A DNA stretch of 64,000 nucleotides from Epithemia pelagica. Lineage: Eukaryota > Protista > Bacillariophyta. Position 1 is the stretch's first letter. Each line of letters begins with the position of its first letter. The notes beneath the pieces are model-generated. The model ran no database searches. It was not told where the DNA came from and worked only from the letters and a program-made list of their open reading frames with translations. Location of the stretch: positions 1,240,001 through 1,304,000 of the forward strand of contig OX337240.1 in NCBI GenBank assembly GCA_946965045.2, written 5' to 3'. The position numbers and the translations under genes were made by a program. Of this stretch, positions 14,235 through 62,904 are shown piece by piece.

Positions 14235-14375
14235 AACAAAGAATGATGACTTTTCTTCTTATGCTGGTGATAATTTGTGATTTGTGATGGTGCATGGTGT
14301 GCAAAACACACTCCACCAGTCTTTGATCCCGTGAATGTGCGGTGTATTGGTACCTTAGCAGGGCGGCGGGTGCCG

Positions 14376-14829: not shown

Positions 14830-14843
14830 CGCTTCCTCTGCGC
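14830..14843 (+). other. Putative non-canonical primer-binding site complementary to the D-arm of initiator tRNA-Met
   Basis: CGCTTCCTCTGCGC directly after the LTR; reverse complement GCGCAGAGGAAGCG vs the eukaryotic tRNA-iMet D-arm GCGCAG(C/U)GGAAGCG. Confidence 0.55.
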
Positions 14844-14871
14844 TTTAGACAGCACACGTCCATCGTCTGCC

Positions 14872-22476: not shown

Positions 22477-23869
22477 AAACCCTCGGTATCAGTGTCCACT
22501 GCTTAGCTGTTTTTTGTCTGTGCCACCTTCATGGGTTCCCAGGTGGACACAGACAGAAAATTTCACTTTTCGTCTGTCCTTTTCACCAATATGGTTCCTC
22601 GTGCTGGTGGAACTGCCGGCGTGCAAGTGACAGTTGGCGGTTAGCATCTTCCTGTGACCGTGACCACGATTCAAATTTGGAATCCTTTCACACGACTCTC
22701 GTCTCGTCACAAAAATCTCACGCGGTGTCAAAAACATCGACATTGACCATGAAACGAGCTCTTTCCGAATCCTTTCGACCTGAAGCAGTATTTTGGTTTT
22801 TCTCTCTTGTTGCTTGTTGTTTTTCTCTTAGCTTCTTTCATGTCCTGCATAGTTTTCTCACACGTTATCTCATTAATCTTTGTCCCTGTTAATGTTGATG
22901 CTTGGTGCTCCTTTGATTTTGTCGCAATGAAATGGAGGACAAGTCATTGTAGGCCGTTTGCCACAACTTCTCCTTGCTTTAATCGTAGTGCTGTTTGATT
23001 GTTGGTTGGTTGTGTTCTTATTTTTGTAGCATGTTTTTTTACTCTCATCATTGTGCTTCGCCCATCTCCATGTCGACCACAGATCAAGAACCTTTCGTTG
23101 TGTGTCGGATACTCAAGTACCTAGACCTAGAGATGACGACAAACTGAGGCAGCTTGTTGCCACTAGGCCTACTCAAACTAGTCTTCATAGATCACAGAGT
23201 CGATCAGATATGCTTCAAGATGGCCTCAAACCTACACCAGAGTGTCATGGTTGTTGAAAGCACGGCAATAACACGCACGATCTTACAAAATCTATGAAAG
23301 ATTAGAACTAAACTTCTGATAGAAACTCCTAAAATACTCCTACAAAGAATAAAGCTCTATGTGGTCTCCAATTTTAAGCCGAGGCTCAAATGGAGAATTG
23401 GCATTCCATAGGCACAAACATTCACTCTCAATGAAGTGGACAGAGAGAGAGACAGTTGTCGAATGTCGAATATCAGAAGAGAAAAACGAATACAAGTGTG
23501 AGGGAGAAGTTAGAATGACAGTACAAGAACTGTTGTTGTCATGGAAACATTTTTGTACGTTCAAACTTACCTCAATTGCATGAAAGGCGACAATTCATGC
23601 CATGCCATTGTGGGTGATGGCCTCTGTATGATTTTATGGGGGATTTGGATGGCGCATTCCAACCAACCGTCATCCACGCAGGGCCGCTTGCTGGGCATGC
23701 GTCTGATTCATGAACTGCGAAAACTCCAGCTGTGTATGCGTGCCAATTTGCAATTTAGTCATTTCCATTTGCGTCAAAAAGGAAATTTTCTGTCTGTGTC
23801 CACTTGGGAACCTATGAAGGTGGCACAGACAAAAAACAGCTAAGCAGTGGACACTGATACCGAGGGTTT
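22477..23869. mobile_element. Putative non-autonomous TIR (MITE/foldback-like) element with 88-bp terminal inverted repeats
   Basis: 22477-22564 is the reverse complement of 23782-23869 with 2 mismatches; no long internal ORF; no TSD found. Confidence 0.7.
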
Positions 23870-34924: not shown

Positions 34925-35484
34925 GGAATATGATTCTAGAGGTACTCGTATTGTGAATGTAATGTAAACAGGCAGAGGGAGGAGTCCGCTGTTCGCGCTT
35001 CGAACAGTGCGAGGGGATGACCCTGCGACCACATCCTGCAGCTATCGTGGCGCTCTGTCGCCGTGCAGGTCTCTCTCATCGTAGTTCTTACGCACGCTAG
35101 GGGTGTAGACGCGTGTGCCGCAAATGGCGGGTAAAAAGTGAGGGCAGTCTGTCAGGCCGCTCCTCCTCCAGGCGTACGTATTTGTCCCCCCATCGCGCCC
35201 GTCGAGTATTCATCTTTACATGCAGCGACCACATTTCTGACAGGCGACAGGCAGACCAAACAGAAATCTTTTTCTGACATCCTCTCGCTTCTATGCAACA
35301 AAGTCTGGAACAGGTATCAGAAATAACAAGCATCAAGAGCAAGACATTCACTTCGATCAAGGTTTCAACACTTGAAGGAACCTAGTGAGGCTCCAATCGA
35401 TAGCTAGCTGACGACATTTGTTAAGAAAGATCAAGACAATTGCGCGGAAACGGCAGGACGTGTTCAAACTTGAACGCTCCGAGC

Positions 35485-38400: not shown

Positions 38401-40874
38401 ATCCGAAAATCAGTTTGATCGTGAATACGTGAAACCGATTCACTTGGGACTGATGAATGACTCTACTCTAAGTCAGAAAGAGGCAAGTGCTGAGAAAACC
38501 TCTCAGCTCATTAAAATTCTTGATCCCTTTGTTCAGCGAAAAGATGCCCGAGAGCTTGCTGCTGTGTTGCCACCGATGCAACAGGTTGTGCTTCACGTTC
38601 GGCAGTCCAGAAGGCAATCCGATCTGTATCGGGACTTCAAGCGATGGCAAAAGAAGAATTCAAGAAACTTCTTCTTAGCTTTGGCGGCTTTGAATCCAAT
38701 CCACAATCATCCTGGTAGCCTTCTCTTTCGGAAAGCGCGTGATCGACATGAGAGACAACAAGAAAGAATAGCCGAAGGTGACGAAGAGATTGACGACCGC
38801 TTATGTCGACGTTGGTGGGACTCCGTAGCAAAGAAATACAGTGCGGAAAAATTGAGCGAACACGGATTCAAAATTGTGCTGGTTCTTCATATTCTTGTTT
38901 TGTCAACACTGAAGAATGAGAAGGTTGTGATTTTCTCACAGTGTTTGAAAACGTTAGACTTTCTTGAGGATGTTTTGGGACGTGACTGGCTTGAATGGTG
39001 CCCAAGTCTCTACAGTTTACTTGGTGACAATTCTACTTTCAAGGGTTGGAAAAAAGATAGAGAAGTGTGTCGAATTGACGGAATGACCAAGGCATGCAAA
39101 CGCGGGACAATTGTTGATGACTTTGATAGCAAGGATAACGTACGGGTTTTTCTAATGAGTAGAGCCAGCTCGGTTGGTATCAATTTGGTAAGTTTGTTGA
39201 AGCATTTTTGCGACTCGCGAGACCATTCATTAACTCCCTCTGTTACAGTTTGCCGCCAATCGCATTGTACTTTTAGATACCCACTTCAATCCAGCGGTTT
39301 CGGAGCAAGCAATTTACCGACTGTATCGATATGGACAGAAGAAGGCCGTTTTCGTTTACCGCCTTTTATCCCAGTCCTCTACGGAGGAGAAGGTTTACTT
39401 TCGGAGTGTAACGAAAACTGGGTTAGCTCTTAGGGTGATAGACAAGAAAAATGTGGAAAGATTCTTCTCAGCGAAGGAAGTGGCGGACCTACAGGAATAT
39501 TTCACCTGGGCACAATGTGAAAGATGCGAGAAATGGCGCGTTTTGTTTGATGCGGACTCCGAAGAACTTCCCGAAAAATGGTACTGTGAAATGAACACAG
39601 ATACACAAAATAATAGCTGCGACAGACCGCAGCGGAGTCAGAGATGGTACGAAATGGAGGAGACTCGTCTAACTGCGTTAGCAAGGGGAGAAGATTGCCG
39701 TTCACTTGTTCAAGAAGAGCCGGAAGGGCTCTCAAGCGAAGATGAGGACAGACTTCGCGAGAATGATCAGTTGCTTAAGCACTTATTGGACATTTGTCAA
39801 ATGGGGAAGAAAACAAAAATAGTGGCTAAACACGTGTTCCACGACATACTCGTCAAACCCACTGACGAGCAACCGGAAAGATTGACAACCAATGAATCTG
39901 CCAATACGATAAGCCCTCCGAAACCCTCTGTTGAAGGAAAGCTATCACAGAGTGGTATGAAGCGTGCGGCAAGTCCAATTGCATCGCCGAATCCTACTAG
40001 AAGCCCGAGGGTTCTTTGTGGCTTCCCTTCTACCAGTGATCACATCGACCAGGAAGTATCGACACCAGCGATGGCATCAACTGAGAGCGACATGGCATAT
40101 GTAGGCGTGAAATGCTGTTCTCACATGACAGCTAGTGAAAGTGCTGCACAATGGAGTTCTCCAACGACACAAATCCCATTATTGTCTCTAGCCACCAAGG
40201 AAGACGCCAAAGATTACGTGAGGAACATGGGTGATTTCGAGTGCACCACCAATTTACATACAATGGCGTCACATAAACAATACCAAGATGATGGAAAACA
40301 AGAGCGGGAATCAAAAGATCATATCATGGAAAAGGGGGATTCCCTTTATTGCTCTCCAGAAACTTTTAGCATAACCCCCCAAACTCGAAAGTCTCCCATA
40401 AGATCAATGACAAAGAATTCGGAAGCACGTGTGAAGGCAATCGAACGACAAGTGATTGACATGGGAGATGCTCGACAAGAACCTGATCGATTTGCTCCTT
40501 CAAATGCAGAACAGAAAGACACTCATAGTGCATCGAATGAGAAGTGTGGACACATTAGTGCAGAGAAGAATAATGGAAGAAACGACTTAAGCTTAATTGG
40601 AGATGGTTGGACAGGAAACTCTGATAAACTCAGAAGTAAGTCGAAGAGGCAATCAGACAATCTCCGTGGCAGCTTGCCACATAAGGAACACACTCTAGGC
40701 TTAGTCGGCAAAAAACGAAAAAAGACTGTTGCAAGAAAGTCGGTTTTGGGCGAGCGGATTGTTCATGGGAGAACAGATGATGTGACTGCCACGCCTCGCT
40801 TCTCGAAAAAGAGCAAACCCCCGCGACCACACGAAAGCGAAATCATCGATTTATCCATGGACGACGACGAATGA
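35485..40874 (+). CDS. ATRX-like SNF2 helicase with ADD-type zinc finger and CW zinc finger, copy 2, apparently intact; introns 37750-37828, 38278-38349, 39188-39248
   Basis: Same motifs and intron positions as copy 1; spliced frames join without stops (LA/HNMGLGKS, QN/NLLEY, INL/FAANRIV); ATG 35485 aligns with the copy 1 start. Confidence 0.9.
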
Positions 40875-41184: not shown

Positions 41185-43281
41185 TCATACAGTCGCTTCG
41201 TCTTTCCTCTCTCCTGCATCATCTCCTTCGCCATCATTCTGATCCATCATGGCGTTGTCATTGTCCGCCACATTGTCCCCTTCTGGTGGTGCCTCCCCGC
41301 CAAAGGAAGGACCACCCTGGTTGGATCCACCAATCGAAATACTCATGGATCCATCCGGGTTCCGTCTTTGTTCCACACGTGAAGACGAAGGGGGAAGCGA
41401 CATGTGCGATCCTAGTGGCCGACCACCCGGCGACTGGCCATCGTAGGTCTGTGGACCGGGCATGTACGGCATGGAAGGATCGTGTCGTCCAGGAGTTGCA
41501 TGTCGATGTGGTGAGAATCCCCTATTCATTAATCCAGGAGATCCAAAAGTACCAGGAGATTGCGGATAGGGAGCATGGCCATAATGGTGTGGGGGAACCG
41601 AAGGGAGCGGAGACATGGGAATATCACTACCGGGTGGTGGAGGAGGCATGTGGTGTCCTCCATAGCCGGGTGGAGCCGTCGAGTGCTGATACTGTGGTGG
41701 TAAAGGACCTCTGGCCGAGACACCTGGCTTGACGCCAGTTCCCTTGGTCGAGAGTCCAAGTTCCTTCAAACGTTGTCTTCGAAGACGATCACCTTCATTC
41801 TTGCGTTTTTTGGCTGATAAGGCGGTCTCGAGAAACTGCTTCTCGATTTTAGTCCGCTTCTTCTCAGGTTTGGCGAGGATACGATCAATCTCTTCCTTCT
41901 TTTCCAGAGCTCGTTCTCTGGAACGATCATTTTTTCTTCTACGGCGAGCTTCGTACTGCGACCACAAATGCCGCTCTTCTTCGTTGCGTTCTTCGGCATC
42001 CTTTTTTTCGATATCACCAATTCGCCCCCTTAGTTTCGAAGCTCGCGACCGAGATTGTGCGTTCTTGCGTGCTCTCCGATCCAACACTTCTTGCGTCGAC
42101 GGAATGCGTGGCTTGATGTAGGTTTTTAATCTCGCCGAGACACCCGCGCCCATTTCTCCGTCGTCATCATCCTCATCGTCGCCTCCCTTGGCCACCTTGT
42201 CGTTGTCATCGTAGGGACCAGAGGCCTTGTCGTCTCTTCTAGAATCGCCTCGACCATCCTGTCGGCCATAATGCGGAGGAGCGTTGGGATCATCTTGATT
42301 CGGGGGTGGCGGATAGCGACTGGGATCAGATGATCCTCCAGGACCATACGGATAATGAGGAGGTGGATGGTGTGGATGATGGTGGGGCGGAGGTTGTCCA
42401 TACATCGGATGTTGTCCATAGGGAGAATACATATAAGGAGGCATCGGGTAGGGTGGATAGCCAGGAGGAGGAGGTCCAGGGTATCCATAGGGTGGTGGGG
42501 GAGGTTGCCCTTCGTAGCCTCGCGGAGGATAGGACCCGCTTCCTTCACCAGGCGGAGGAGGAGGAGGGGGGTACATGTGCGGTGGATAGTAACCATGGTG
42601 GCCATGAGCAGGCGATCCATGCGGAGGAGGATATCCGGGATAATGAGGAGGAGGCGGGGGTCCACCCCCTCGTGAAGCGTCTCCACCCGGCGGTGGTGGG
42701 TAGGGGGGAGGGGCATCGGACCCTTCTGCACCAGGTCGGCCTGGAGTGAAGGGTGCTGTAGGATGCCCTCCAGGAGCAGCTTGCCCGTCCTTCCCTGGTG
42801 GTGGAGGAAATCCCTCTCCTGCTCCTCCATGAGGGGGAGATCCAAAGGGAGGATGCGGTGGCTGATCCGAAGGTGGTTGCGTGTCTTCTCCTCCAGCTGG
42901 AGGAGGTTGTTGATCACTACCTTCCACCGTCGAATTTGGAGGAGGTTGCGAAGAGGAAGGATCAGTGGATTCGGAAGTCTTTGTGTACTCTTCTGTATTC
43001 ATGGGTGCATCGGCTTGCCCTTCTGGTGCACCACCATCGGAAGGGCCCGGTGCATCCGATGTCATTTCCCCACCTCCCTGCATTCCTTCACTGCCAGCAG
43101 GATCATCCGATGAGGCTTCTGGTGGATGCTGTGGTTCTTCAGCATCTTGCTGTTCTGGCACACCCCCTTCAACATCTTCAGGTTTCCCTTCTTGTTCAGG
43201 TCCTGTCTCTTCCGATTCTTGTTTCACTGCTACATCTTCTTCGGAAGTTTTCGGTTCGGCTTGCTCTTCAGCTTCACTCAT
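41185..43281 (-). CDS. Pro/Gly/His-rich protein with three basic helical (bZIP-basic-like) repeats; putative nucleic-acid-binding regulator
   Basis: 698-aa ORF; RRARKNAQSRSRASKLR, RRRRKNDRSRERALEKK, AKKRKNEGDRLRRQRLK. Confidence 0.8.
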   Translation of the reverse strand: MSEAEEQAEPKTSEEDVAVKQESEETGPEQEGKPEDVEGGVPEQQDAEEPQHPPEASSDDPAGSEGMQGGGEMTSDAPGPSDGGAPEGQADAPMNTEEYTKTSESTDPSSSQPPPNSTVEGSDQQPPPAGGEDTQPPSDQPPHPPFGSPPHGGAGEGFPPPPGKDGQAAPGGHPTAPFTPGRPGAEGSDAPPPYPPPPGGDASRGGGPPPPPHYPGYPPPHGSPAHGHHGYYPPHMYPPPPPPPGEGSGSYPPRGYEGQPPPPPYGYPGPPPPGYPPYPMPPYMYSPYGQHPMYGQPPPHHHPHHPPPHYPYGPGGSSDPSRYPPPPNQDDPNAPPHYGRQDGRGDSRRDDKASGPYDDNDKVAKGGDDEDDDDGEMGAGVSARLKTYIKPRIPSTQEVLDRRARKNAQSRSRASKLRGRIGDIEKKDAEERNEEERHLWSQYEARRRRKNDRSRERALEKKEEIDRILAKPEKKRTKIEKQFLETALSAKKRKNEGDRLRRQRLKELGLSTKGTGVKPGVSARGPLPPQYQHSTAPPGYGGHHMPPPPPGSDIPMSPLPSVPPHHYGHAPYPQSPGTFGSPGLMNRGFSPHRHATPGRHDPSMPYMPGPQTYDGQSPGGRPLGSHMSLPPSSSRVEQRRNPDGSMSISIGGSNQGGPSFGGEAPPEGDNVADNDNAMMDQNDGEGDDAGERKDEATV

Positions 43282-53394: not shown

Positions 53395-54914
53395 GCGTGT
53401 TTTTTTTGTTGTGTTCGGTTTTTGATTTGTATGATTTTGTTTTTGTGAGAGCAAACGACAAACGACCTATCGGTTTGAAGATCGTTTCTGGAATGAACTC
53501 GGAAGACACTTCGCATACAATTTTGTAGAGTGTACACTAGCACAAGTGGCTTAATCGAATTCGGAAGATGAAATGCACTGATTTTTCTATAGTGTACAGT
53601 CTTTGAAATTACGCCCATTGAAGAACTCGAAAGACAACCCTCCGACTAGGTGTCCGCTTCTTAGCCCCCCAGCCGCTCTCCGCGACCAACCATTTTAATT
53701 TTGGTTTTTTTGCGTTTTTGAAGAAAATTTCGGGTCAAAATGAAAATGATCACGCCGGCCTTCTGGATCACCGTTTTGAAATTTTGTGAGCAGGCGTGCG
53801 CACTTTGACCGTTGGTCTTCCCCATTCTTGATTGTCGTCCTAAGTTGCGACCCACATTATTTTCACTACGCACCTTTTGACATGGATAATGGACATGCAC
53901 CATCACAATGCATTCTCCATCATCTGCACACCATGGACATTTGACATATAGAGACCATAGATAGTGTTTTGCTCTACCCCATCCTTTCTTTGTTTTTTCT
54001 AGGAGAAGTGTGGTTGTTTCTAGTGTTTGTGTCCGTTTAAAAGTGGACCCTCCTCCACAACACCGTGCCGTTGCCGTAGGCTTGTCTCTTTGCAACCACA
54101 TACAGTCCTATTTTAGAATACGTCTCTTTCTAGTTGCGTTATGGAGCATATAGAGTGTAGAGTCCCTTGCACTGCTGGGAAAGACAAGTCATGCTCATGG
54201 CAACAAAAAAAGAACAACAGGAGCAGGTCGACATCACAATCCACTATAGACCCAAACTGAGCGACAGCAGAGGAAAAATGGATGGCTTCCTCCAATTATC
54301 CTACCTACTCCTAATTGAGGTCTATAGCTCTATTTTGTCCTATAAGATTCCTACAAATGATGCCAGCAGCCCCACATGGCATCGACCAAAATGGATGTTA
54401 CATGGCACAAACAAATGACACACTATGGCAACTGGCAACGTAGTGAGAGCCTACAACTAAACATTGTCCATTCCAATGCAAGTATTAGCCATTCCAGAAC
54501 TTACCATGATGGATGTGCAGTGACAAAGATGAGATGAGATGGCCAGGGACGAAGCATGCCGTTTTTGGTGTTGGTTTGGTCATTGCCTCGTTTTGTTGCC
54601 TGCATCGATTTTGTGACCCGTGAACTCACTCAGAACACTATTTTGAGTCTTGTTGAGCAGAACGCCTGCCATCTTCCAACTGTCACATCACGCCAGCCTT
54701 TCCACCGATGGATGTGAAATTTCCATTCATTTTTTTGTCTGTGAGATTGGGTTTGTCTTGCCCGAACAGACGAGCTAAGAAGCGGACATCTAGTCGGAGG
54801 GTACAATTATCAAGAGTCTGCTCCTTATTATACACTACTATAACTTTTACTCTTGAACTTTTTGGATGTGGAATCTGGAATCAGCCTGAGCAGCATACAA
54901 TGGCCAGAGCTGTG

Positions 54915-55245
54915 AAGTAACAAAGTACCATTTTTCTCAAAGTACCCTACTTTCCTACTTTACTTCGAAGTACTTTCAATTAATGAAGTAAAGTACACCT
55001 TTTCTTTGAGTACTACTTTCGGTACCCCAAGTAACACCACCCCTTTTTTCCCAGTATATCATAGTACGTAAGTAAAGTACCCCCTTTTCTCAGCCATTCC
55101 TTAAAGTATACAAGTACTTCCATAGTCACCTTACTTTGATACTTAAAGTATCAAAGTACACCACCCCGTTCCTAATTGACTACTTAAAGTACCAAAGTAA
55201 AGTACCAGTAAGACGTATTGTCAGAAATTAAGTAGGAAGTAACAC
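54915..55245. repeat. Left subterminal AAGTA(C) motif array of the hAT element
   Basis: Many AAGTA/AAGTAC/AGTACT copies, e.g. aaagtaccaaagtaaagtaccagtaag. Confidence 0.85.
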
Positions 55246-55488
55246 CTCATCTCACTGTCAAAATACTTTCTATGACCATAACACACACTCAACACACATT
55301 GGTTTGTCTATTTTTCCAAACGCACACACACAACAGATGAGGATAAGTTTCATTTTGCACTTTGCACCTCTCGGGACATGGTTTGGTTTTCTTCTCTACA
55401 ACAATCAGACAGTTTTGTTTTGTTTTGGAATCTCTATTCGTATTGTTTTGGATATCCTGTTCTCATTACCTTCTTTCAACGATTAACC

Positions 55489-58400
55489 ATGCCGGACGAC
55501 AAGGACGATGGTACAACGTCTAATGACGACGATCCATCACCTCGACGTTCCAAGCAAACGAGCAACAAGAAAACGAGGAAGTCACCCAAAAACAAGAAGT
55601 CTCCCTGTACCAAGAAGAAAAATCCTCAATCTTCAAAGAAAGAACCATCGGCCTCTGCGAAGAAGAAGAAGAAGAAATCTCCCTTACAACGCAAACCATC
55701 GGCCTTGGAAAAGGAACAGGCAAAAGTTGATGAAGATTTCAAACATTTGGAAGACGCAGTCGATGATGGGGTACAACAGGAAAAAGACTTGGTTCCCTTG
55801 TTCGACGCAATCAATCCGAACTTCTTTGACAGCAACTGCTCCCAGTGGTGGAAATTCTCATTACATGTGGACTGGATGAAGCTCGAACACTTTTATCTCG
55901 AGAATGAGGACAACCTTTCCAACATGGGTGGATTACAGAAGATAATCAAACAACTCAAAATATTTGTTGCCGTTGGAAAAAACCCAGTGCCACTCGACTC
56001 ATCCCCTTCAAAATTGGCCAAACTTTCGAAGGAGCGTTTTGGAAAGCTATGCCGTAAATGCGTCATATGTCCCCTTTGTTTTTTCGACAAGAAAAAGACT
56101 CTTTCCGAGTCTGTTATTCTCTGCGGCTCACTTCGTCCCTCCAACATTGCTTCTCATTGCGAGAAGAAACACAAGGATTTCAAATTAGAAAACGATGCTG
56201 ATGACAAATCACCCCCCAGTAAACAATCGACAATGTCAACCTACCGAAAAGGTCATTCGACGAAGTCTGAGACATATGCACAGATGCAAACTCTCATCTA
56301 TCAGTTTGTCAACGATTGCTGTCTTCCGGCAATCACTGTGGAGAAACCGCAATTCCGGAAAATGATTCAATTCGCTATGGAGAATTCTGGTATTTTGAAA
56401 GGGAGCCGTTCAGAAATAATGAGTCGACGACAGATTACAAAAATTCGACTCTCGTCGTATCAGAACTTTTTCCTTATTGTCTCTGATCTTGTCAGGAAAG
56501 TGAGAGATGAGTACACGCGTCTGTGTTCCCAATCCATTCCCTTTATTACTTGTTGCCATGATATATGGCAAGCTCGTGATCACGACGTGCTCGGTGTAAC
56601 TATCATGTTTACTGATCCTCGTAACTGTGAAGTCTACAAGATCCCAATTGGTCTGGCGGAATGTCACGGCCATGCGGCAACAGACGTTGCCAACCTTACA
56701 GACAACCTACTCCTGAGTGTTGGTCTTACATCGGGTGATCTATGCGCTGCCGTAAACGATAACACGTCGGCCGCAGTCTTAGCGGGAAAATACATTATTG
56801 GGAATCCGGACAAGTCTGGTAAGTGCGACATGCACAAAGCAGAGCTTATCCTAAAGCATGCTACCGGACTTGTTAAACGATACAACAACAATATCTTAAT
56901 GGATAGCAATCCATCTTTCTGCAAATGTTGGGAAGTTTTCAGAACCTTCGCGGCCTGGTTTACCTCGAAGAAAGCCCCTACGCGCTGGAAACGATTCAAA
57001 GACGCGGCAATGAAAATCAAGGCTCATGTTGTCTCTATCCCGCTTCCGAACGACACGCGAGTTGGAGGATGCGTCCTGACCCAACAAGCCCTTCTCCGGA
57101 ACAAAAAGATGATGGATTTGTACGCTAAAACTGCGCAAAAAAGCGACCCCAAGTTCGCAAAGCGCTATCCATCAGAGGACAAATGGAAACTACTCGCGCA
57201 GTACGAGGGGATACTCACCAATATAAAAAGGGTTTCAATGCAACTGCAAACAGACGATCCTGGATCCAACTCGGCGTCCTTGTTAGAAATCTACACAGCA
57301 TTCTACCACGCCCAGCGAATGAGAATGGAAGGAGAAGAATGTGGTGTTGGATGTTTACGTACGGACACGGAAGATTTCTGGGACGCTAGTCTCACGATGG
57401 ACGATCTTGATGGTATGAGAGACCTTATTGCTTATAAGGATCTCGAACCGGGGGCACGCTTGCTCATACGGCGCATCATACAGGAATATCGACATTACCT
57501 CTTCAATAGGGACCCCGATGCCCTAAAAGCAGTCTGTGCGAATCCATTACTCGCAAATGTCTATGCGGATATGTTTGTTAACTTCGGCGTCTACGATCAA
57601 GACTCCGTAAGGGAAGGCCGCCGGATCTTTGTACAAGACATGGTTGACCTACATTCCAACAGGAGTGTGTCTCCTATCGGTGCTTCATTGGCCAACCAAG
57701 GAGCAAAAGGTTCAAAACCCAACAAACGGACTGGGACAGGCCAACCGAAAGACGACAACGACTATGTGGACACCGAAAGCAACAATGCAACCTTGAAATA
57801 CAAGGCAATCGATGTATTTGAAAGAATGCGGCGTTCAAGTGACTTAAAAAATCAGGCGATGCTGCATCTAACAGGCAAAGCCTCTAATGCAGCCGAGGAG
57901 AAAGAAGTGCTACAGGCATTGAAGAAGGCATGCAACGACTCGTATGATGACTTTATTCGCCACTGCAAATATCAAATTGACAACCACTGGGAGGAAGTCA
58001 TCAAGGCATACCCCAGCAAGAAGTTCTCGGACGAATACGATGACTGGTCCGACGTTGCTAAGCGAGCTTTCTCCCGCCATTGCCACAATCGGAACTATTT
58101 GCAAGTCGGTCAACATTTTGATCTTATGGGATGGTGGCGGGTTCATTCAAGCAATTGGCAATATGTTTTCCCGTCTGCCGTCATTTGGCTTGCGAAACCG
58201 GCAACTAACGCATTTCAGGAACGGATTTTTTCCATGGGGAGCTGGATGCTCCAGAACAAGCTGATGGGTAGTATGTCAAAAAAAACCAGCGAGATGCGGA
58301 CGATGGAGTACATCAACCGCCAAGTCTTGCGTACCATAGAGGAAAATGAAGAGGATATTGCGAAAGGCAATGGAACCAGCAAAACATACGATAAACGGAT

Positions 58401-59649
58401 CATTCGAAAGGACGATACTGCCATTACAGCTGCTGTACGATTGAGTTTGAGTGAACAACGCAAGAAATTCCAGAAATCCGCAGTCCTCGATGCTGCAAAT
58501 GGATTCCAACAGTACAAGCTATCCTGGAAAGTGGATACAAGCGTTCTGGATGATCCTGACATCGGTAGTACGTTTTTTCCCGTGCAATCAGCCAAAGTGA
58601 CTAAAAAAGCAACCGCATTGAATGACAATGATGATGACAACAGTCCGTCCGATAACGACATACCGGTACCACCACCGGAGGAAGTGCCAAAGGTTGCTGG
58701 TGTGGTGCCTCCTATACCGGACGATCAAGCGGAGATTGGACAGGACAAGACTGGTAAACGCTATGGATGGACAACTTATGGCGAGAAGACCAGTCCATTG
58801 AAGTATAATCGCTTTGTCTTCACCAACATCAAAGACGATTATGAAGATTCTTCGGACGACGATTCAATACCACCACCACCAAAAGAACCGGACGAAGAAA
58901 GTGATGCGGTTATTGACCGCGTGTTAGATAGTGAACTCTGGGACGAAGCCGTCCCAGATGAAGAACTATGTTTCGAAAAGATAGTCTGTATTCCCGATGA
59001 TGATCCGACTAACAAAGCACCCAAAGGTACTGTCAACGATGACGACGAAGTCAAAGTAGTAAAGGTCGTACCAGCAGGTGAAAGTGCAAAGAGAAAAGGC
59101 ATCCCGTCTCCGAAAGCCTCCATCTCATCGAGCAAAGCTGTTGCGCATGCAGCTGACACGGGGTCGAAAAAAAGGAAAGGCAATTCCAATAACAATCCAT
59201 CGACACCGACCAGAAAGAAGGCGAAAAAACTGTCTCAAACAACTCTAGTTGGAATCAGGCAGTCGCCGCGGATTCTTGAGAAAGAGACGAAACGCAAAAA
59301 AGAGAAGTATAATGCCAAAAAACAGGAACAACCAATGGAATGTGACGAGAACGACGCGGCCAAGTCGGATGAAGAGTTCGATAACAACGAATTGGATGCC
59401 AACGATGATGACTACGAACCAAACGAGGTGGAGAATGATGCATCGGAGGGCACCGATGAAGAGGAGGAACATGACAATGATGATGAGGAAGACGACGGTG
59501 TCGAGGGAGTGGACAAGGCTGTCGATGACGAATTGGAAGGCGAGGAAGACCAAGGTGATGAAGAGGGGGATGACGAAGGAGATGAGGGAGATGAAGAAGC
59601 CGGAGAGGATGAAGAGGAGAATGATGAAGAGGATGATGAAGACGAGTAA
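55489..59649 (+). CDS. hAT transposase with BED-like zinc finger, DDE core, hAT dimerisation domain and long acidic C-terminal extension
   Basis: CVICPLC...SHCEKKH; HDIW (D1); VNDNT (D2); CDMH (CxxH); DTRVG; LMGWWR...AKPATNAFQERIFS (E). Confidence 0.93.
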   Translation: MPDDKDDGTTSNDDDPSPRRSKQTSNKKTRKSPKNKKSPCTKKKNPQSSKKEPSASAKKKKKKSPLQRKPSALEKEQAKVDEDFKHLEDAVDDGVQQEKDLVPLFDAINPNFFDSNCSQWWKFSLHVDWMKLEHFYLENEDNLSNMGGLQKIIKQLKIFVAVGKNPVPLDSSPSKLAKLSKERFGKLCRKCVICPLCFFDKKKTLSESVILCGSLRPSNIASHCEKKHKDFKLENDADDKSPPSKQSTMSTYRKGHSTKSETYAQMQTLIYQFVNDCCLPAITVEKPQFRKMIQFAMENSGILKGSRSEIMSRRQITKIRLSSYQNFFLIVSDLVRKVRDEYTRLCSQSIPFITCCHDIWQARDHDVLGVTIMFTDPRNCEVYKIPIGLAECHGHAATDVANLTDNLLLSVGLTSGDLCAAVNDNTSAAVLAGKYIIGNPDKSGKCDMHKAELILKHATGLVKRYNNNILMDSNPSFCKCWEVFRTFAAWFTSKKAPTRWKRFKDAAMKIKAHVVSIPLPNDTRVGGCVLTQQALLRNKKMMDLYAKTAQKSDPKFAKRYPSEDKWKLLAQYEGILTNIKRVSMQLQTDDPGSNSASLLEIYTAFYHAQRMRMEGEECGVGCLRTDTEDFWDASLTMDDLDGMRDLIAYKDLEPGARLLIRRIIQEYRHYLFNRDPDALKAVCANPLLANVYADMFVNFGVYDQDSVREGRRIFVQDMVDLHSNRSVSPIGASLANQGAKGSKPNKRTGTGQPKDDNDYVDTESNNATLKYKAIDVFERMRRSSDLKNQAMLHLTGKASNAAEEKEVLQALKKACNDSYDDFIRHCKYQIDNHWEEVIKAYPSKKFSDEYDDWSDVAKRAFSRHCHNRNYLQVGQHFDLMGWWRVHSSNWQYVFPSAVIWLAKPATNAFQERIFSMGSWMLQNKLMGSMSKKTSEMRTMEYINRQVLRTIEENEEDIAKGNGTSKTYDKRIIRKDDTAITAAVRLSLSEQRKKFQKSAVLDAANGFQQYKLSWKVDTSVLDDPDIGSTFFPVQSAKVTKKATALNDNDDDNSPSDNDIPVPPPEEVPKVAGVVPPIPDDQAEIGQDKTGKRYGWTTYGEKTSPLKYNRFVFTNIKDDYEDSSDDDSIPPPPKEPDEESDAVIDRVLDSELWDEAVPDEELCFEKIVCIPDDDPTNKAPKGTVNDDDEVKVVKVVPAGESAKRKGIPSPKASISSSKAVAHAADTGSKKRKGNSNNNPSTPTRKKAKKLSQTTLVGIRQSPRILEKETKRKKEKYNAKKQEQPMECDENDAAKSDEEFDNNELDANDDDYEPNEVENDASEGTDEEEEHDNDDEEDDGVEGVDKAVDDELEGEEDQGDEEGDDEGDEGDEEAGEDEEENDEEDDEDE

Positions 59650-59734
59650 ACAGAAAGTACATTGCACGACGTATTACATACAACAACAACAATACAACAA
59701 CAACGAAGAGATCGACAATGAGTTAACATATTAT

Positions 59735-61702
59735 TTAGGAAGTTACATGGTATTTATGAATCATCGATCTCATTTTCTGTCTTAGGGCATTGTCAAATAG
59801 GTTTGTATTCCCAATTTGGGACAATATTTCGGACCTCGACTCATAAGTACTAGAGTGTTGACCAAACGCACCAAACATTGGATTTATCACATTCCATGAC
59901 TCCTTTGGAATCCATGATTCCAGAATTTTGGAACAGGGGATACCTGTTGCACGCAAAGGTATCCAAGACAAATGCTCGCTCCATCGGATGACATGGATAT
60001 CGGCCGGTATTCCATCGACCCGATCAAATGCCGCTTCGATTATGATGCAAGCGGTCTTATAACCGATGCCATGTAGAGTGGTTAATTCGTAGATTGTTAT
60101 GTTGTGGGGTATTTTGCCGTCATGCCGTTGACAGAAATAGTCAGCGGCATTGACAATTCGTTCTGTATTCGGATAATACCGACCACATTCGGACAGCAAA
60201 CAACAGAGTGCGTTCATTCCGAACTGCAAAGCGATCTCGATTACAGCCTGCGCAGAGGTAAGACCACATGCAAAAAGTCTCGGCATTATCGAGCTCAACT
60301 GCTTATCGGAGGTGCTACTACTCATGCATATTGTCATCAATATCATGAATGGCCTATCAGCAGTGGGATCATGGCAACAGTCAAGCCAGGTAGTCCATTT
60401 GTCGCGTGGAACAAACTTGCCGAGAGATTTGAGCTCTTCGTGGAAAGCTTTCATTTGCGCCAGGTCTTCAAGTCTTTGTTGAATTGTGACGTAGTCGACC
60501 TCTGGTATTCTTACGGTGCAGTGAACCGGAGTCGTTGTCTTTGCTGGTTTCCCAGGTTGATGACGGTGGTCGGGATAGTTAATTTCGTGTTTCGAACGAG
60601 AGGCCGCTTGTAGAATTTTTGCGATTGTTGCGTTCCGAAATCTGGTGGAATAGGAATGGGTACATGTTGGAGATTTCTGTGGTGATTGTTTTTGTTGCTT
60701 CTTTTTCTTAGAAGAAGCGTCATCCTTCTGTCCGTAGAAATTATCGTTGCGTTCGATACCGTCATCTTGGTCGTCTTTCATAACGGCGTCGTGTTTCGTA
60801 CCATGTTCGTGTTCCGTACAGCTGTCGTCTTTCGTACCGTGGTCGTCGTCGTCGTCGTTTGGGGGAATGGAAGGATTGCTGGTGGAAATACTCAATCTTT
60901 CTGGGTGCGCGGTGGTCTCCCTGTGTTCCTTGAATTTGTATTCCAGTAATGAAAGGTATGGACGTAGAGATAGAGGATACGCAACTTCGTTGGCGGATTC
61001 TTCCATAGTGCAATCATTGACATAATAGTCAAGTTCCATTTGTTGTGGGACTTGATGACAAACAACATGCACGCCGGTACGGATGAACCAGGATGTGATG
61101 ATCGCATTAATTGGGGTCGACCGGAGTTGGTTGCTGGTTTGCAATGTAAAGTCAATGCAGTTGTGCACTTTGGGTGTCTGAACAAGAGAAATTACAGGGT
61201 CACAGCGAACCGACAAAACCAATCGGCTTGAATATTCGGTTTCACTTGGAATGAAGAAGTGTTGGAAAGAATCGATTGATCGGTTCTTGGGAAAGCCATC
61301 CTGAAGAGACCGGACGATAATGCCACTAATCAGTTGGATTTGTTCTCTGAAAAGTAATTCGGGAACTTGGCAAGTATGGGACTGAGATGTATATGTATTT
61401 CGTTCTTTGTATACAATGAATCCATTGTGACGGATAAGCCATGAAATGGCTTGGCGGTGAACGGCATAACGAAGTGCGTTCGGAGACAGTGAAGAGTTCT
61501 GTGTCGTCTTCATAAAATCATCCATAAAAGAGAAAAAGGATGGGCTGGAGTGAAGAATGTACATTGGGTAACATTTGGAACGGAACTGGATGGATTGTCC
61601 ATCAATGTATTCTTCCATGATATGGACAATAACAACAGAGGTGCAAGGATCGAAAATAGAATTGAGGTGCGGATGGAGTTTGGGTGTTGGGTAATGGGCC
61701 AT
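59735..61702 (-). CDS. HhH-GPD DNA glycosylase/AP lyase (endonuclease III/Nth-like, no FeS cluster) fused to an uncharacterised N-terminal region; transposon cargo
   Basis: FMILMTICMSSSTSDKQL; HhH LTTLHGIGYKTACII; GIPADIHVIRW; WNVINPMFGAFGQ; no C-x6-C-x2-C-x5-C; lies wholly between the TIRs. Confidence 0.9.
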   Translation of the reverse strand: MAHYPTPKLHPHLNSIFDPCTSVVIVHIMEEYIDGQSIQFRSKCYPMYILHSSPSFFSFMDDFMKTTQNSSLSPNALRYAVHRQAISWLIRHNGFIVYKERNTYTSQSHTCQVPELLFREQIQLISGIIVRSLQDGFPKNRSIDSFQHFFIPSETEYSSRLVLSVRCDPVISLVQTPKVHNCIDFTLQTSNQLRSTPINAIITSWFIRTGVHVVCHQVPQQMELDYYVNDCTMEESANEVAYPLSLRPYLSLLEYKFKEHRETTAHPERLSISTSNPSIPPNDDDDDHGTKDDSCTEHEHGTKHDAVMKDDQDDGIERNDNFYGQKDDASSKKKKQQKQSPQKSPTCTHSYSTRFRNATIAKILQAASRSKHEINYPDHRHQPGKPAKTTTPVHCTVRIPEVDYVTIQQRLEDLAQMKAFHEELKSLGKFVPRDKWTTWLDCCHDPTADRPFMILMTICMSSSTSDKQLSSIMPRLFACGLTSAQAVIEIALQFGMNALCCLLSECGRYYPNTERIVNAADYFCQRHDGKIPHNITIYELTTLHGIGYKTACIIIEAAFDRVDGIPADIHVIRWSEHLSWIPLRATGIPCSKILESWIPKESWNVINPMFGAFGQHSSTYESRSEILSQIGNTNLFDNALRQKMRSMIHKYHVTS

Positions 61703-61818
61703 GTCGTTGGAGCAGGAAGTAGTAAGCGTCAACGTGTGCTGTGCGCTGTGATTGGTCAGACAGAGAAGGATGTACTACAACGTACTAAAGTATGGTTTAA
61801 CGTGTGCTATGCGATGAA

Positions 61819-62180
61819 AAAGTAAGTAAGGGCATGGAAAATATGTAGATACTTTAGTAGAGAAGTAAAGTATATCGTATTGGATGAGGAAGGTAAAAGT
61901 AGTAAAGTAAAGTACCGACATGTTTACTAGATGTTTGATGTGGGAAAGTAGGTTGGATATGTTCGGGGAGGGGTGTACTTAGTCATAAAGTAATTCAGCT
62001 ATTCATTTCTATGGAATGGTATAGTAGTTAAGTAAAGTAGTACGATGAGATTTGTCTGTAGAAAAGTAGCAAAGTAGAATGTTAACAAATAATCAGTGTA
62101 CTTAATAGTAACTAAGTAAAGTAGGTGGATAAAATATGTACACTTAGAAGTAGCTAAGTATTCTAAATAACGTTTATTAG
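61819..62180. repeat. Right subterminal AAGTA motif array of the hAT element
   Basis: aagtaagtaag, aaagtagtaaagtaaagtacc, taagtaaagtagtacg etc. Confidence 0.85.
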
Positions 62181-62904
62181 TTACTACACAGCTCTGACAA
62201 TAGGACGACGGAAAATGACTCGAGAAGAAACCAACATAACAAGGAGAGCCAAACATAAAAGATCGTATGCCACGGTAGCCAAGCCTGTCTGATTGTCTCG
62301 AATGCTCAAGTGTGACGGAAGTTGGCTCAGCACGGGGTTGCACTTGTCGGCCATTCAATGGTTGTCGAGCAATGGGTTTCCTGCCCGGTCTCTGACTGGA
62401 AACAATGCGAGATGCAACAACCAACTGGATGGATCATTCATGAGGGAGGGAGTGAGGGGGTGTAAGGAGGTCAGGGATTAAGGACCAGCATTCTCACTAC
62501 CAAGACTACAGCGCTGTTTCGTGAACCCGCTCGGATCGACCCAAACCAAATGACAAAGTGTCCGGTGTGTTAGATTGAGGGGGGTAAGTTTCATTTGTGA
62601 CTCCCACAGCAAACGCACCGGTCATTTTCATTGGACATTGGGGCTGCATGGCACAGGACGGGATCAAAAACTCTTCGAATTTGACTCCCACACTATGCTT
62701 GCTACGGTGCCCATGCTTCGGAAAATGTATGCTTGCTCTCCAGCCGCACCAGAAACAGCATCTCTTCATATTGTGATATAGTATACACATCTCGACCTGA
62801 CTCCCACAACTCTCCAGACAGCTCCATTTCGTGGGACAATTTTTAAAGTGGCACAAACTGAAAGGAGTCACCATAGTGGGATCAAGTGAAAGATACTTTA
62901 CACC

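What the first reader, a model, noticed from the sequence alone, without database searches (positions are those of the whole stretch)
54905..62196. hAT DNA transposon carrying its own Nth-like HhH-GPD DNA glycosylase
Seen: a 17-bp TIR pair, a near-8-bp TSD and subterminal arrays enclose two intact convergent ORFs, a hAT transposase and a ~655-aa protein whose C-terminus is a helix-hairpin-helix GPD glycosylase. Established: hAT elements typically encode only a transposase; plant DME/ROS1 5mC demethylases are HhH-GPD glycosylases; some TEs carry anti-silencing cargo (VANC in Vandal MULEs, TET/JBP in fungal KDZ elements); diatom TEs are CG-methylated. Inference: this could be a TE-encoded base-excision system that erases silencing marks, processes excision hairpins or abasic sites, or protects the element. 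I know of no described hAT-glycosylase pairing, but could not search.
Basis: partly seen in the sequence, partly recalled or inferred. Interest (0 to 1): 0.92.

Follow-up and report, generated by a model that had tools for sequence, protein, structure and literature searches.

The report
Diatom hAT transposon carrying a DNA glycosylase
This is an intact jumping gene of the hAT type, from a diatom, that carries a conserved DNA-repair-type enzyme (an endonuclease III-like glycosylase) next to its transposase, a pairing seen in many independent copies and not found in the literature searched.

Summary
Window 54905-62196 is a 7,292-bp element with 17-bp terminal inverted repeats (16/17), flanking 8-mers matching 6/8, subterminal AAGTAAAGTA arrays and two intact convergent ORFs.

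ORF1 is a hAT transposase. ORF2 (627 aa from its likely Met) has a confidently predicted N-terminal domain with no detectable relatives, a disordered linker, and an endonuclease III/NTHL1-like C-terminal domain. That domain keeps the catalytic Lys and Asp but has no [4Fe-4S] cysteine cluster.

The pairing is a family trait, not a one-off:
- Seven further complete elements, six in one diatom assembly and one on a sediment-metagenome contig, enclose the same gene pair. Six have perfect 8-bp target duplications at different loci.
- Three further assembly copies (one insertion-disrupted, one missing a TIR) and two short environmental contigs show the same convergent arrangement.
- Transposase and glycosylase trees are congruent, and synonymous sites are saturated while the proteins stay conserved.
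- About 44 clusters at 50% identity form one clade among Nth-like proteins.

Function is inferred, not shown. My preferred reading is a glycosylase/AP-lyase that counters methylation-based silencing of the element (about 0.4). Literature searches found no described hAT-glycosylase pairing; the closest analogue is the TET/JBP-carrying transposons of fungi.

The parts
54897..54904 (.). Left flanking 8-mer ACAATGGC (one half of a degraded target-site duplication)
   Evidence: Matches the right flank ACAATAGG at 6/8 positions. Sister elements have perfect 8-bp TSDs.
54905..54921 (+). Left terminal inverted repeat CAGAGCTGTGAAGTAAC
   Evidence: Matches the right TIR at 16/17 and is the only such pair in the window. 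The family consensus is CAGRGYTGTG..AGT.
54922..55488 (+). Left subterminal region and upstream region of the transposase gene, with AAGTAAAGTA / AAGTAC repeats at 54956-55204
   Evidence: Motif enrichment and repeat families D2, D6 and D13. The repeat motif equals the inner part of the TIR and differs between subfamilies.
55489..59649 (+). hAT transposase gene. The ORF opens at 55378; the likely start is M38 at 55489, giving 1386 aa.
   Evidence: ORF and alignment with relatives. Dimer_Tnp_hAT scores 19.6 bits here but 22-32 bits, above the 21.4 cut-off, in relatives. The family profile matches Hermes transposase at E 1.2e-7.
56059..56172 (+). BED-like zinc-finger motif C-x2-C ... H-x4-H (CVICPLCF...SNIASHCEKKH)
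   Evidence: Motif seen in the alignment and coordinates checked. The only Pfam zf-BED hit is a weak one in a distant relative, E 0.033.
56560..56562 (+). Candidate first catalytic Asp (D395 in ORF numbering, motif CHDIWQ)
   Evidence: Invariant in the 5-sequence alignment A2 and the 21-sequence alignment A6 and verified. Its assignment as a catalytic residue rests on motif resemblance to hAT transposases, which is inference.
56758..56760 (+). Candidate second catalytic Asp (D461, motif VNDNTS)
   Evidence: Invariant and verified. The catalytic assignment is inferred from the motif.
58072..58257 (+). hAT C-terminal dimerisation region holding the catalytic-Glu motif PATNAFQERIFS (E948 at 58219-58221)
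   Evidence: Pfam PF05699 covers aa 899-960. It aligns to the Hermes motif PASSAASERTFS. E948 was verified.
58315..59646 (+). Long low-complexity C-terminal tail of the transposase, Lys-rich then Asp/Glu-rich
   Evidence: Alignment and GAT/GAA repeat family D1. In the sister copy L001 a Copia element is inserted here, at window-equivalent 59537-59541.
59650..59734 (.). Spacer of 85 bp between the two convergent stop codons
   Evidence: The same tight convergent layout occurs in all related elements.
59735..61618 (-). Glycosylase gene, 627 aa from the Met at 61618. The mechanical ORF runs on to a TTG at 61732.
   Evidence: L001 has the same MEEYID start. Window versus L001 gives dN/dS 0.24, and synonymous sites are saturated against all other copies.
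60899..61618 (-). N-terminal domain (aa 1-240) of unknown fold, apparently an internal duplication with a W-[LM]-I-R..G motif at W60 and W177
   Evidence: AF2 model pLDDT 90.7, pTM 0.83. There is no PDB or BFVD structural match (best E 0.09 and 0.22, TM at most 0.3) and no credible Pfam hit: one of 23 members matched DUF417 at E 0.003. The domain is conserved across the family.
60647..60898 (-). Disordered, compositionally biased linker (aa 241-324)
   Evidence: pLDDT below 50 over aa 250-323. Its length varies between copies.
59738..60646 (-). Endonuclease III / NTHL1-like HhH-GPD glycosylase domain (aa 325-627) without an Fe-S cluster
   Evidence: TIGR01083 E 2.5e-17. NTHL1 7rds E 3.9e-22. 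Foldseek TM (target) 0.70-0.76 to 7rdt, 1orn and 1orp. None of 35 family members carries a C-x(5-8)-C-x2-C-x(4-6)-C motif.
60056..60058 (-). Catalytic Lys of the helix-hairpin-helix motif (K521 in GIGYKTA), the mark of a bifunctional glycosylase/AP lyase
   Evidence: Conserved in 26/26 family sequences covering the site. It aligns with the GVGPKMA motif of NTHL1. Coordinates verified.
59999..60001 (-). Catalytic Asp (D540 in IPADIHV)
   Evidence: Conserved in 26/26. It aligns with the IAVDTHV motif of NTHL1. Verified.
61619..62179 (-). Right subterminal region and upstream region of the glycosylase gene, with AAGTAAAGTA repeats at 61863-62123
   Evidence: and repeat families D2 and D3.
62180..62196 (-). 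Right terminal inverted repeat (CAGAGCTGTGTAGTAAC on the reverse strand)
   Evidence: Similarity to the sister copy L001 stops within a base of this end (window 62197), and L001's flank is different.
62197..62204 (.). Right flanking 8-mer ACAATAGG

Best explanation
Shown (about 0.95): the locus is an autonomous, probably recently active hAT DNA transposon of a raphid pennate diatom. It belongs to a diversified hAT lineage in which every readable element carries two genes between its TIRs:
- a BED-like / DDE-type / hAT-dimerisation transposase;
- a convergently transcribed 560-640-aa protein.

The second protein was acquired once, from a eukaryotic NTH1-type endonuclease III, and has co-evolved with the transposase under purifying selection. 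It has three parts: a family-specific N-terminal domain, a disordered linker, and an HhH-GPD domain. The HhH-GPD domain keeps the Schiff-base Lys and the catalytic Asp, so it is predicted to be a bifunctional glycosylase/AP lyase, but it has lost the [4Fe-4S] cluster.

Inferred (about 0.4): the enzyme serves the element rather than general host repair. It would be brought to element DNA or chromatin by its orphan N-terminal domain, either by binding DNA or by binding the transposase. There it would excise 5-methylcytosine, or a deaminated or oxidised derivative of it. Host base-excision repair would then restore unmethylated cytosine, lifting DNMT-dependent silencing so that the transposase stays expressed. 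On this reading it is a glycosylase counterpart of the TET/JBP genes carried by fungal transposons and of VANC in VANDAL elements.
For: Anatomy:
- TIRs, subterminal repeats and two intact ORFs are present.
- The transposase is hAT-type: PF05699 scores above its cut-off in relatives, and the family profile matches Hermes at the catalytic-Glu motif with E 1.2e-7.
- 8-bp TSDs are perfect in six elements: L002, L004, L005, L006, L008 and L009.

The glycosylase is an integral part of the element:
- It is present and convergent in L001-L009 and on the two short contigs L011 and L012.
- Seven further complete elements of 6.6-11.3 kb contain just this gene pair, apart from later nested insertions in L002.

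Single acquisition and co-evolution:
- The transposase and glycosylase trees are congruent, with similar path lengths.
- The family is one clade among 119 Nth-like domains (SH-aLRT 91; 99 for 28 of its 29 members).
- Scores fall sharply between the family (at least 138 bits) and ordinary Nth proteins (about 100 bits).

Selection:
- Window versus L001 gives dN 0.009, dS 0.040, ratio 0.24.
- All other pairs have saturated dS with dN 0.35-0.9.

Predicted catalytic competence:
- The Lys and Asp are conserved in 26/26 sequences.
- The fold matches NTHL1 and endonuclease III.

Support for a service specific to the element:
- The host presumably has its own NTH, since cellular Nth homologues are abundant among the hits. 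A general repair enzyme would therefore give the element little advantage.
- The extra N-terminal domain is found only in this family.
- Subterminal motifs differ between subfamilies.

Support for the silencing context:
- In the diatom P. tricornutum, loss of DNMT5 depletes DNA methylation and de-represses young TEs (PMC9998398).
- DNA transposons, including hAT7, carry TET/JBP genes that their author suggests remove silencing marks (PMC12730594).
- Established knowledge, not tested here: the plant 5mC glycosylases DME and ROS1 are Nth-related HhH-GPD enzymes that use the same Lys/Asp chemistry.
Against: - No substrate was tested. By sequence and fold the domain is closest to NTHL1 and endonuclease III (oxidised-pyrimidine glycosylases), and it does not detectably match DME/ROS1.
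- It lacks the Fe-S cluster that DME and ROS1 need.
- The subterminal repeat motifs contain no CpG.
- CpG observed/expected in the elements (0.69-1.02) is no different from their flanks (0.83-0.95), so no methylation or demethylation footprint is visible.
- No methylome or expression data for this organism were available.
- Whether the N-terminal domain binds DNA is unknown.
Confidence: 0.4

Rival explanations
1. Transposition cofactor. The glycosylase/AP-lyase works in the transposition reaction or its aftermath. It might nick or process DNA at the donor site or at the 8-bp gaps, or channel repair of the excision site towards homologous recombination so that the donor copy is restored. It would be recruited by the transposase through the orphan N-terminal domain.
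For: - The gene is strictly linked to the transposase, co-diverges with it and evolves at a similar rate.
- The Schiff-base Lys that gives AP-lyase (strand-cleaving) activity is conserved.
- The family-specific N-terminal domain could be a protein-protein adaptor.
- No methylation footprint is visible in the elements.
Against: - From established knowledge of Hermes and Ac: hAT transposition needs only the transposase and host end-joining or gap repair, and no step calls for base excision.
- Most hAT families do without such a gene.
- There is no evidence that the two proteins interact.
Confidence: 0.25
2. Anti-mutagenic guard. The enzyme removes deaminated or oxidised bases (T:G or U:G from deamination of 5mC or C, thymine glycol and similar) from element DNA. 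This would protect the lineage from the C-to-T decay that methylated repeats suffer, or from a host deaminase defence.
For: - The domain is closest to Nth/NTHL1.
- The Nth-family T:G mismatch glycosylase Mig (1kea) is among the structural matches, TM 0.70.
- From my own knowledge: Mig is encoded on a plasmid beside a cytosine methyltransferase, a precedent for a mobile element carrying such a guard.
- The window copy has CpG observed/expected of 1.02-1.10 against 0.91 for the whole window.
Against: - The other family elements have CpG observed/expected of 0.69-0.90, equal to or lower than their flanks.
- A diffusible repair enzyme benefits the whole genome, so selection at the level of the element would be weak unless the enzyme is targeted.
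- Substrate specificity is unknown.
Confidence: 0.15
3. Host manipulation. The protein creates abasic sites or nicks genome-wide or at chosen targets, triggering a DNA-damage or repair state or opening chromatin in a way that favours integration or element expression.
For: - The catalytic residues are conserved.
- Loss of the Fe-S cluster and gain of a new domain suggest a changed role.
- Neighbouring clades in the domain tree are also clusterless, unusually long Nth-like proteins of unknown role.
Against: This is speculation with no precedent among DNA transposons. Such activity would be costly to the host, yet many intact copies coexist in one genome.
Confidence: 0.08
4. Passenger or host gene. 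The glycosylase is a host NTH gene that lies beside, or was recently captured by, one hAT copy and has no role for the element, or the pair is a domesticated host locus.
For: Capture of host gene fragments by DNA transposons is common (established knowledge). The window copy's TSD is imperfect at 6/8.
Against: - The pair recurs inside TIRs with perfect TSDs at six other loci and on contigs from other samples.
- The two trees are congruent.
- dS is saturated while the catalytic residues are kept.
- The family is one clade distinct from cellular Nth.
- Many subfamilies have several copies more than 90% identical on different contigs.
Confidence: 0.02

Closest known systems
hAT superfamily DNA transposons (Ac, hobo, Tam3, Hermes)
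   Same: Short TIRs beginning CAG, 8-bp target-site duplications and subterminal repeats that echo the TIR. The transposase has a BED-like finger, D/D/E motifs and the hAT C-terminal dimerisation domain.
   Different: It carries a second, conserved gene for a DNA glycosylase. The transposase is about twice the usual length because of a 400-450-aa low-complexity tail.
TET/JBP-carrying DNA transposons of fungi (Kyakuja/Dileera/Zisupton, hAT7, IS3EU, Harbinger and others; PMC12730594)
   Same: Cut-and-paste transposons, including hAT members, that carry inside their TIRs an enzyme acting on DNA bases. The presumed role of that enzyme is to remove cytosine-methylation silencing marks.
   Different: The enzyme class differs (HhH-GPD glycosylase/lyase rather than a 2OG-Fe dioxygenase), and so does the host (diatom rather than fungi). 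Here the cargo was acquired once and co-diverges with the transposase, whereas some fungal TET genes (the PU type of rusts) moved repeatedly between transposon superfamilies.
Endonuclease III / NTHL1 (Nth family, TIGR01083)
   Same: The HhH-GPD fold, the catalytic Lys in the hairpin and the catalytic Asp. It is the best sequence and structure match.
   Different: There is no [4Fe-4S] cluster (0 of 35 members). It scores far below the equivalog cut-off (63 versus 211.7 bits). It has an extra 240-aa orphan domain and a linker, and it is encoded in a transposon.
DEMETER/ROS1 5-methylcytosine glycosylases of plants
   Same: Members of the HhH-GPD superfamily that use a Lys/Asp bifunctional mechanism. 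They would be functional analogues if this enzyme excises 5mC.
   Different: No detectable specific similarity, no Fe-S cluster and no DME-type flanking domains. 5mC activity has not been tested.
VANC anti-silencing proteins of VANDAL (Mutator-like) elements in Arabidopsis (PMC5735166, PMC10398659)
   Same: An accessory protein encoded by a DNA transposon that is thought to act on the element's own copies to undo epigenetic silencing, with sequence motifs that diverge between subfamilies.
   Different: VANC is a non-enzymatic DNA-binding protein, whereas this one has a predicted catalytic glycosylase domain. Targeting to the element is only hypothesised here.
Cluster-free HhH glycosylases (clusterless MutYX 8uuc, MagIII, OGG1)
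   Same: They show that HhH-GPD enzymes can work without the Fe-S cluster, and they appear among the structural matches.
   Different: They belong to different subfamilies with different substrates. None is known to be carried by a transposon.

Membership tests
hAT superfamily transposon | 8-bp target-site duplication | tested here: met
   Perfect 8/8 in L002, L004, L005, L006, L008 and L009. The window copy has 6/8.
hAT superfamily transposon | Short terminal inverted repeats, typically starting (C/T)AG | tested here: met
   CAGAGCTGTG[A/T]AGTAAC matches 16/17 in the window. CAGRG... TIRs of 14-21 bp occur in all complete relatives.
hAT superfamily transposon | Transposase with the hAT C-terminal dimerisation domain (PF05699) | tested here: met
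   The window protein scores 19.6 bits, just under the 21.4 cut-off. Seven relatives score 22-32 bits, above the cut-off. The family profile matches Hermes at E 1.2e-7 over this region.
hAT superfamily transposon | RNase-H-like DDE catalytic core | tested here: inconclusive
   The Glu motif aligns to the Hermes motif SERTFS. The two Asp motifs (CHDIWQ, VNDNTS) are invariant but were assigned by resemblance only.
hAT superfamily transposon | N-terminal BED zinc finger | tested here: inconclusive
   A C-x2-C...H-x4-H motif is conserved. Pfam zf-BED appears only as a weak hit (E 0.033) in one distant relative.
Endonuclease III (Nth) family | HhH-GPD fold | tested here: met
   AF2 model pLDDT 82.8. 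Foldseek TM (target) is 0.70-0.76 to NTHL1 and endonuclease III. The profile matches NTHL1 at E 3.9e-22.
Endonuclease III (Nth) family | Catalytic Lys in the helix-hairpin-helix and catalytic Asp about 20 residues later | tested here: met
   K521 and D540 are conserved in 26/26 family sequences and align with those of NTHL1.
Endonuclease III (Nth) family | C-terminal [4Fe-4S] cluster (Cys-x6-Cys-x2-Cys-x5-Cys) | tested here: not met
   The tails hold 0-2 Cys. None of 35 family members has the motif, against 40 of 96 nearest non-family hits. It is therefore filed as 'Nth-like, clusterless', not as an Nth equivalog; TIGR01083 scores 63 bits against a 211.7 cut-off.
Endonuclease III (Nth) family | Excision of oxidised pyrimidines with AP-lyase activity | not testable with these tools
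   This needs a biochemical assay.
DME/ROS1 5mC glycosylases | Glycosylase domain with an Fe-S cluster plus the conserved DME-specific flanking domains | tested here: not met
   There is no Fe-S motif. No Pfam, NCBIfam or PDB hit other than the Nth, OGG, MutY and 3-methyladenine (MagIII/AlkA-type) glycosylase types was found. The N-terminal domain has no known relatives.
DME/ROS1 5mC glycosylases | 5-methylcytosine excision | not testable with these tools
   This needs a biochemical assay and a methylome.
Transposons carrying a DNA-base-modifying 'eraser' gene (TET/JBP+ transposons) | Enzyme gene located inside the TIRs and kept in multiple independent insertions | tested here: met
Transposons carrying a DNA-base-modifying 'eraser' gene (TET/JBP+ transposons) | The enzyme is a TET/JBP dioxygenase | tested here: not met
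   The cargo is an HhH-GPD glycosylase. This is an analogue, not a member.

The most novel reading that the evidence does not exclude
The hAT lineage encodes a clusterless, Nth-derived glycosylase that excises 5-methylcytosine, or its immediate derivatives, specifically from its own copies, guided by a previously unknown DNA- or transposase-binding N-terminal domain. That would be the first glycosylase-based anti-silencing weapon of a transposon. It would also be an origin of active, base-excision DNA demethylation independent of the plant DME/ROS1 family.
Probability: 0.3. Interest if true: 0.92.

Novelty: new variant of a known kind. Interest (0 to 1): 0.8.

Why it matters
Autonomous DNA transposons rarely carry enzymes other than the transposase. 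The few known cases (VANC, TET/JBP, SET-domain genes) have been informative about the arms race between transposons and epigenetic silencing.

This is a well-delimited, multi-copy hAT lineage, diversified enough that synonymous sites are saturated between subfamilies, that has kept a predicted active DNA glycosylase/AP-lyase under selection.

- If the enzyme removes methylation marks, it gives a directly testable, compact demethylase system in diatoms. Diatoms are a group where TE silencing depends on DNA methylation and no demethylase is known to me.
- If instead it assists transposition or guards the element's sequence, it reveals a new link between base-excision repair and cut-and-paste transposition.
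- In either case it supplies a natural Fe-S-free Nth variant and a confidently predicted domain with no detectable relatives for structural and biochemical study.
- It also warns annotators that proteins labelled 'endonuclease III' in diatom and environmental data can be transposon genes.

Tried and rejected
- Two scans of JGI metagenome contigs, one with the glycosylase alignment and one with the transposase alignment, returned no confirmed relatives. They add nothing on environmental distribution; the only JGI evidence is the protein-level hits.
- Fold searches of the N-terminal domain against PDB and BFVD, and a Pfam scan of 23 members, found no credible match: only one member hit DUF417, at E 0.003. 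Its role stays open.
- CpG observed/expected was examined as a footprint of methylation or demethylation. It does not separate the elements from their flanks or from Copia elements, so it was dropped as evidence.
- The bacterial promoter/terminator scan is irrelevant for a eukaryote and stayed at background level.
- The third TIR-like hit at 37754-37770 is a chance match at an intron-like junction and has no partner.
- Similarity between the window's left flank and the flank of L003 looked at first like a shared larger element or a segmental duplication. It is explained by a separate 1.2-kb non-autonomous TIR element at 53637-54802.
- Short Logan and JGI contigs were checked as possible transcripts, which would have been evidence of expression. 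They are genomic: there is no poly(A), and the tail of the convergent ORF is present.
- Pairwise dN/dS between subfamilies cannot be estimated because dS is saturated. Only the window-L001 pair gives a number.
- The exact species was not identified. The closest named relative comes from a single gene.
- A structure model of the transposase was not made, because both prediction jobs went to the glycosylase.

Full report
**1. The observation**

The region 54905-62196 is bounded by CAGAGCTGTGAAGTAAC and its inverted partner CAGAGCTGTGTAGTAAC, which match 16/17. This is the only such pair in the 64-kb window, where 0.16 matches are expected by chance. The adjacent 8-mers ACAATGGC and ACAATAGG match at 6 of 8 positions.

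Nine of the twelve window matches to AAGTAAAGTA fall within about 300 bp of the two ends, against 2.6 expected in the whole window.

Two long convergent ORFs fill the interior:
- 55378-59649(+), 1423 aa. Relatives start at the Met at 55489, which gives 1386 aa.
- 59735-61732(-), 665 aa from a TTG. Relatives start at the Met at 61618, which gives 627 aa.

**2. What the two proteins are**

*ORF1, the transposase.* Pfam on the window protein alone gives only a sub-threshold Dimer_Tnp_hAT hit. Stronger evidence comes from relatives:
- Seven relatives score above the curated cut-off.
- A 21-sequence profile matches Hermes transposase at E 1.2e-7 over the PATNAFQERIFS motif, which carries the catalytic Glu.
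- The alignments show an invariant CHDIWQ, an invariant VNDNTS and a C-x2-C...H-x4-H finger. I read these as the two Asp motifs and a BED-like finger, by resemblance only.
- A low-complexity tail of about 450 aa follows the core.

*ORF2, the glycosylase.* It matches the NCBIfam endonuclease III model at E 2.5e-17, far below the equivalog cut-off. A family profile matches human NTHL1 at E 3.9e-22, better than bacterial endonuclease III at 1.5e-14.

An AlphaFold model built on 31 family sequences has mean pLDDT 82.8 and shows three parts:
- a confident N-terminal domain (aa 1-240);
- a disordered linker (aa 240-323);
- a confident C-terminal domain that superposes on NTHL1, endonuclease III and the Mig thymine glycosylase, with TM 0.70-0.76.

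The Schiff-base Lys (GIGYKTA) and the catalytic Asp (IPADIHV) are conserved in all 26 family sequences that cover them. The four-cysteine Fe-S motif is absent from all 35 family members of 200 aa or more, whereas 40 of the 96 nearest non-family hits have it.

The N-terminal domain modelled alone reaches pLDDT 90.7 and pTM 0.83. It looks like an internal duplication. It has no structural match in PDB or BFVD and no credible Pfam family; one of 23 members hit DUF417 at E 0.003.

**3. Is the pairing real or accidental?**

A search with the glycosylase returned five relatives, 35-97% identical, all on large contigs of one ENA assembly. Each is followed by a convergent ORF of 1,000-1,350 aa. A search with the transposase returned 24 relatives. 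Of the six looked up, four (L006-L009) have a convergent glycosylase next to the transposase, L010 is too short to tell, and P0040/P0042 gave the short contigs below.

Element ends were then mapped:

| Locus | Coordinates | TSD | Note |
|---|---|---|---|
| L002 | 5204-16542 | CTCACCAA | nested insertions |
| L004 | 9524-16342 | CTTAAAAG | both ORFs intact |
| L005 | 9468-16515 | ATCGACAC | both ORFs intact |
| L006 | 5425-12168 | ATCCGAAT | both ORFs uninterrupted |
| L008 | 5368-12019 | CCGTTCAC | both ORFs uninterrupted |
| L009 | 5383-12208 | AAAGACAC | both ORFs uninterrupted |

All six have CAGRG... TIRs and perfect 8-bp duplications at unrelated sites.

Other copies:
- L007 is an 8.7-kb sediment-metagenome contig. 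It holds a complete element with 21-bp TIRs matching 19/21.
- L001 is a 96%-identical sibling of the window copy at another locus. Similarity ends within a base of the TIR end. A Copia element with a 5-bp duplication is inserted in the transposase tail, and the glycosylase is intact.
- L003 has a frameshifted transposase and has lost one TIR next to an unrelated inserted element.
- L002 carries a nested piggyBac-like gene and a partial duplication.
- Two short environmental contigs, one from JGI and one from Logan, also show the glycosylase followed by the tail of a convergent ORF.

So the gene sits inside the TIRs in every copy whose interior is readable. Copies decay by ordinary TE processes.

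**4. Evolution**

- Maximum-likelihood trees of the nine transposases and the nine glycosylases share the same backbone: ((window, L002, L003), L004), L005, then L008, then L006/L007/L009. No supported branches conflict, and path lengths are similar.
- Between subfamilies synonymous sites are saturated while dN is 0.35-0.9. For window versus L001, dN/dS is 0.24.
- An exhaustive profile search of 1.84 billion representatives found 44 clusters at E of 1e-30 or better. Scores then drop from 138 bits to the roughly 100 bits of ordinary Nth proteins.
- In a tree of 119 domains the family is one clade. Its nearest neighbours are also cluster-free, uncharacterised Nth-like proteins.
- The nearest named cellular hits are eukaryotic NTH homologues from Citrus and a labyrinthulomycete.
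- Several subfamilies have 5-8 members more than 90% identical on different large contigs, which suggests recent activity.
- Subterminal repeat motifs differ between subfamilies and mirror the inner part of each TIR, as expected for lineages with their own binding specificity.

**5. Host**

A ceramidase gene beside the L009 element is 72% identical to Epithemia clementina and about 50% to Nitzschia, Seminavis and Amphora. The assembly is therefore a raphid pennate diatom near the Rhopalodiales. The window shares a 96%-identical element and other TE families with that assembly, so it comes from the same or a very close genome.

No family member came from NCBI or UniProt proteomes. JGI labels its members 'endonuclease III'.

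**6. Mechanism**

*Shown:*
- the element's anatomy;
- its hAT membership;
- the single acquisition and selective maintenance of a glycosylase that keeps its catalytic residues.

*Inferred:* the enzyme's substrate and role.

A general repair enzyme would bring the element little, because cells have their own NTH. The family-specific N-terminal domain argues for a targeted, element-specific service.

I rank the possible roles as follows:
- Anti-silencing, about 0.4. The enzyme would excise 5mC or a derivative, and host base-excision repair would restore unmethylated C. Diatom TEs are repressed through DNMT5-dependent methylation (PMC9998398). Other DNA transposons, hAT7 included, carry TET/JBP enzymes for the presumed same purpose (PMC12730594). 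VANC shows that element-specific anti-silencing evolves (PMC5735166).
- Transposition or repair cofactor, about 0.25.
- Anti-mutagenic guard, about 0.15.
- Host manipulation, about 0.08.
- Passenger or host gene, about 0.02; the data in section 3 contradict it.

Evidence against the favoured reading:
- The domain is nearest to NTHL1, not DME/ROS1.
- It lacks the Fe-S cluster.
- The repeat motifs have no CpG.
- CpG statistics show no footprint.

**7. Novelty**

Seven literature searches found no transposon-encoded HhH-GPD glycosylase and no hAT-glycosylase pairing (two searches gave context). Repbase itself could not be searched.

The kind, a DNA transposon carrying a DNA-base-modifying accessory enzyme, is known. 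The enzyme class, the host group, the cluster-free Nth variant and the orphan domain are new. I rate it a new variant of a known kind, with high interest.

Noticed in passing
window 53637-54802 and 22480-23866; L003 8177-9514 and 16573-18577: Two non-autonomous elements of 1.2-1.4 kb have related long TIRs (CCCTCCGACTAGGTGTCCGCTTCTTAGC / CCCTCGGTATCAGTGTCCACTGCTTAGC). One lies 103 bp left of the hAT end. Related copies sit next to or inside the L003 hAT copy, where one may have removed its TIR. A piggyBac-like transposase gene nested in L002 might be their autonomous partner, but this was not tested.
   Followed up: partly
window 67-4011 and 16183-20112; L001 12764-18451; L006 581-5350: Copia-type (RVT_2, gag_pre-integrase) polyprotein ORFs make this a TE-rich region. 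The L001 Copia is inserted into the hAT transposase tail with a 5-bp duplication.
   Followed up: partly
window 4802-7150 and 24099-26744; 32080-33408 and 39435-40874: There are two paralogous large AAA_16/AAA_22 NTPase ORFs and two zf-CW ORFs in the same window. They may be lineage-specific gene families or parts of other mobile elements.
   Followed up: no
window 41185-43281 (-): A 698-aa ORF with no Pfam hit lies in a locally GC-rich stretch (0.52-0.58, against about 0.47 elsewhere).
   Followed up: no
proteins P0074, P0076, P0077, P0079, P0084, P0086, P0091, P0161, P0162, P0167: The clades next to the hAT glycosylases in the domain tree are also Nth-like proteins without the Fe-S motif. 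Some sit in clusters with members of 796, 1143 and 1806 aa that JGI annotates as 'endonuclease III'. Their genomic context and any link to mobile elements are unknown.
   Followed up: no
L002 5204-16542: This hAT copy has perfect TIRs and TSD but has grown to 11.3 kb. It has a nested DDE_Tnp_1_7 (piggyBac-like) gene at 5739-7916 and a partial tandem duplicate of the glycosylase 5' part at 8398-9474.
   Followed up: partly
window 37700-37830: A GTGAGT-type junction directly after the ORF ending at 37758 suggests a spliceosomal intron in a host gene (35440-37758, continuing downstream). The two hAT genes, by contrast, appear intron-less.
   Followed up: no
window 59735-62197 versus L001 9357-11986: Identity between the two sibling copies is uneven. 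It is 99% over the glycosylase 5' end and upstream region but 96.6% overall, which may reflect gene conversion or recombination between copies. That could also explain the imperfect 6/8 TSD of the window copy.
   Followed up: no
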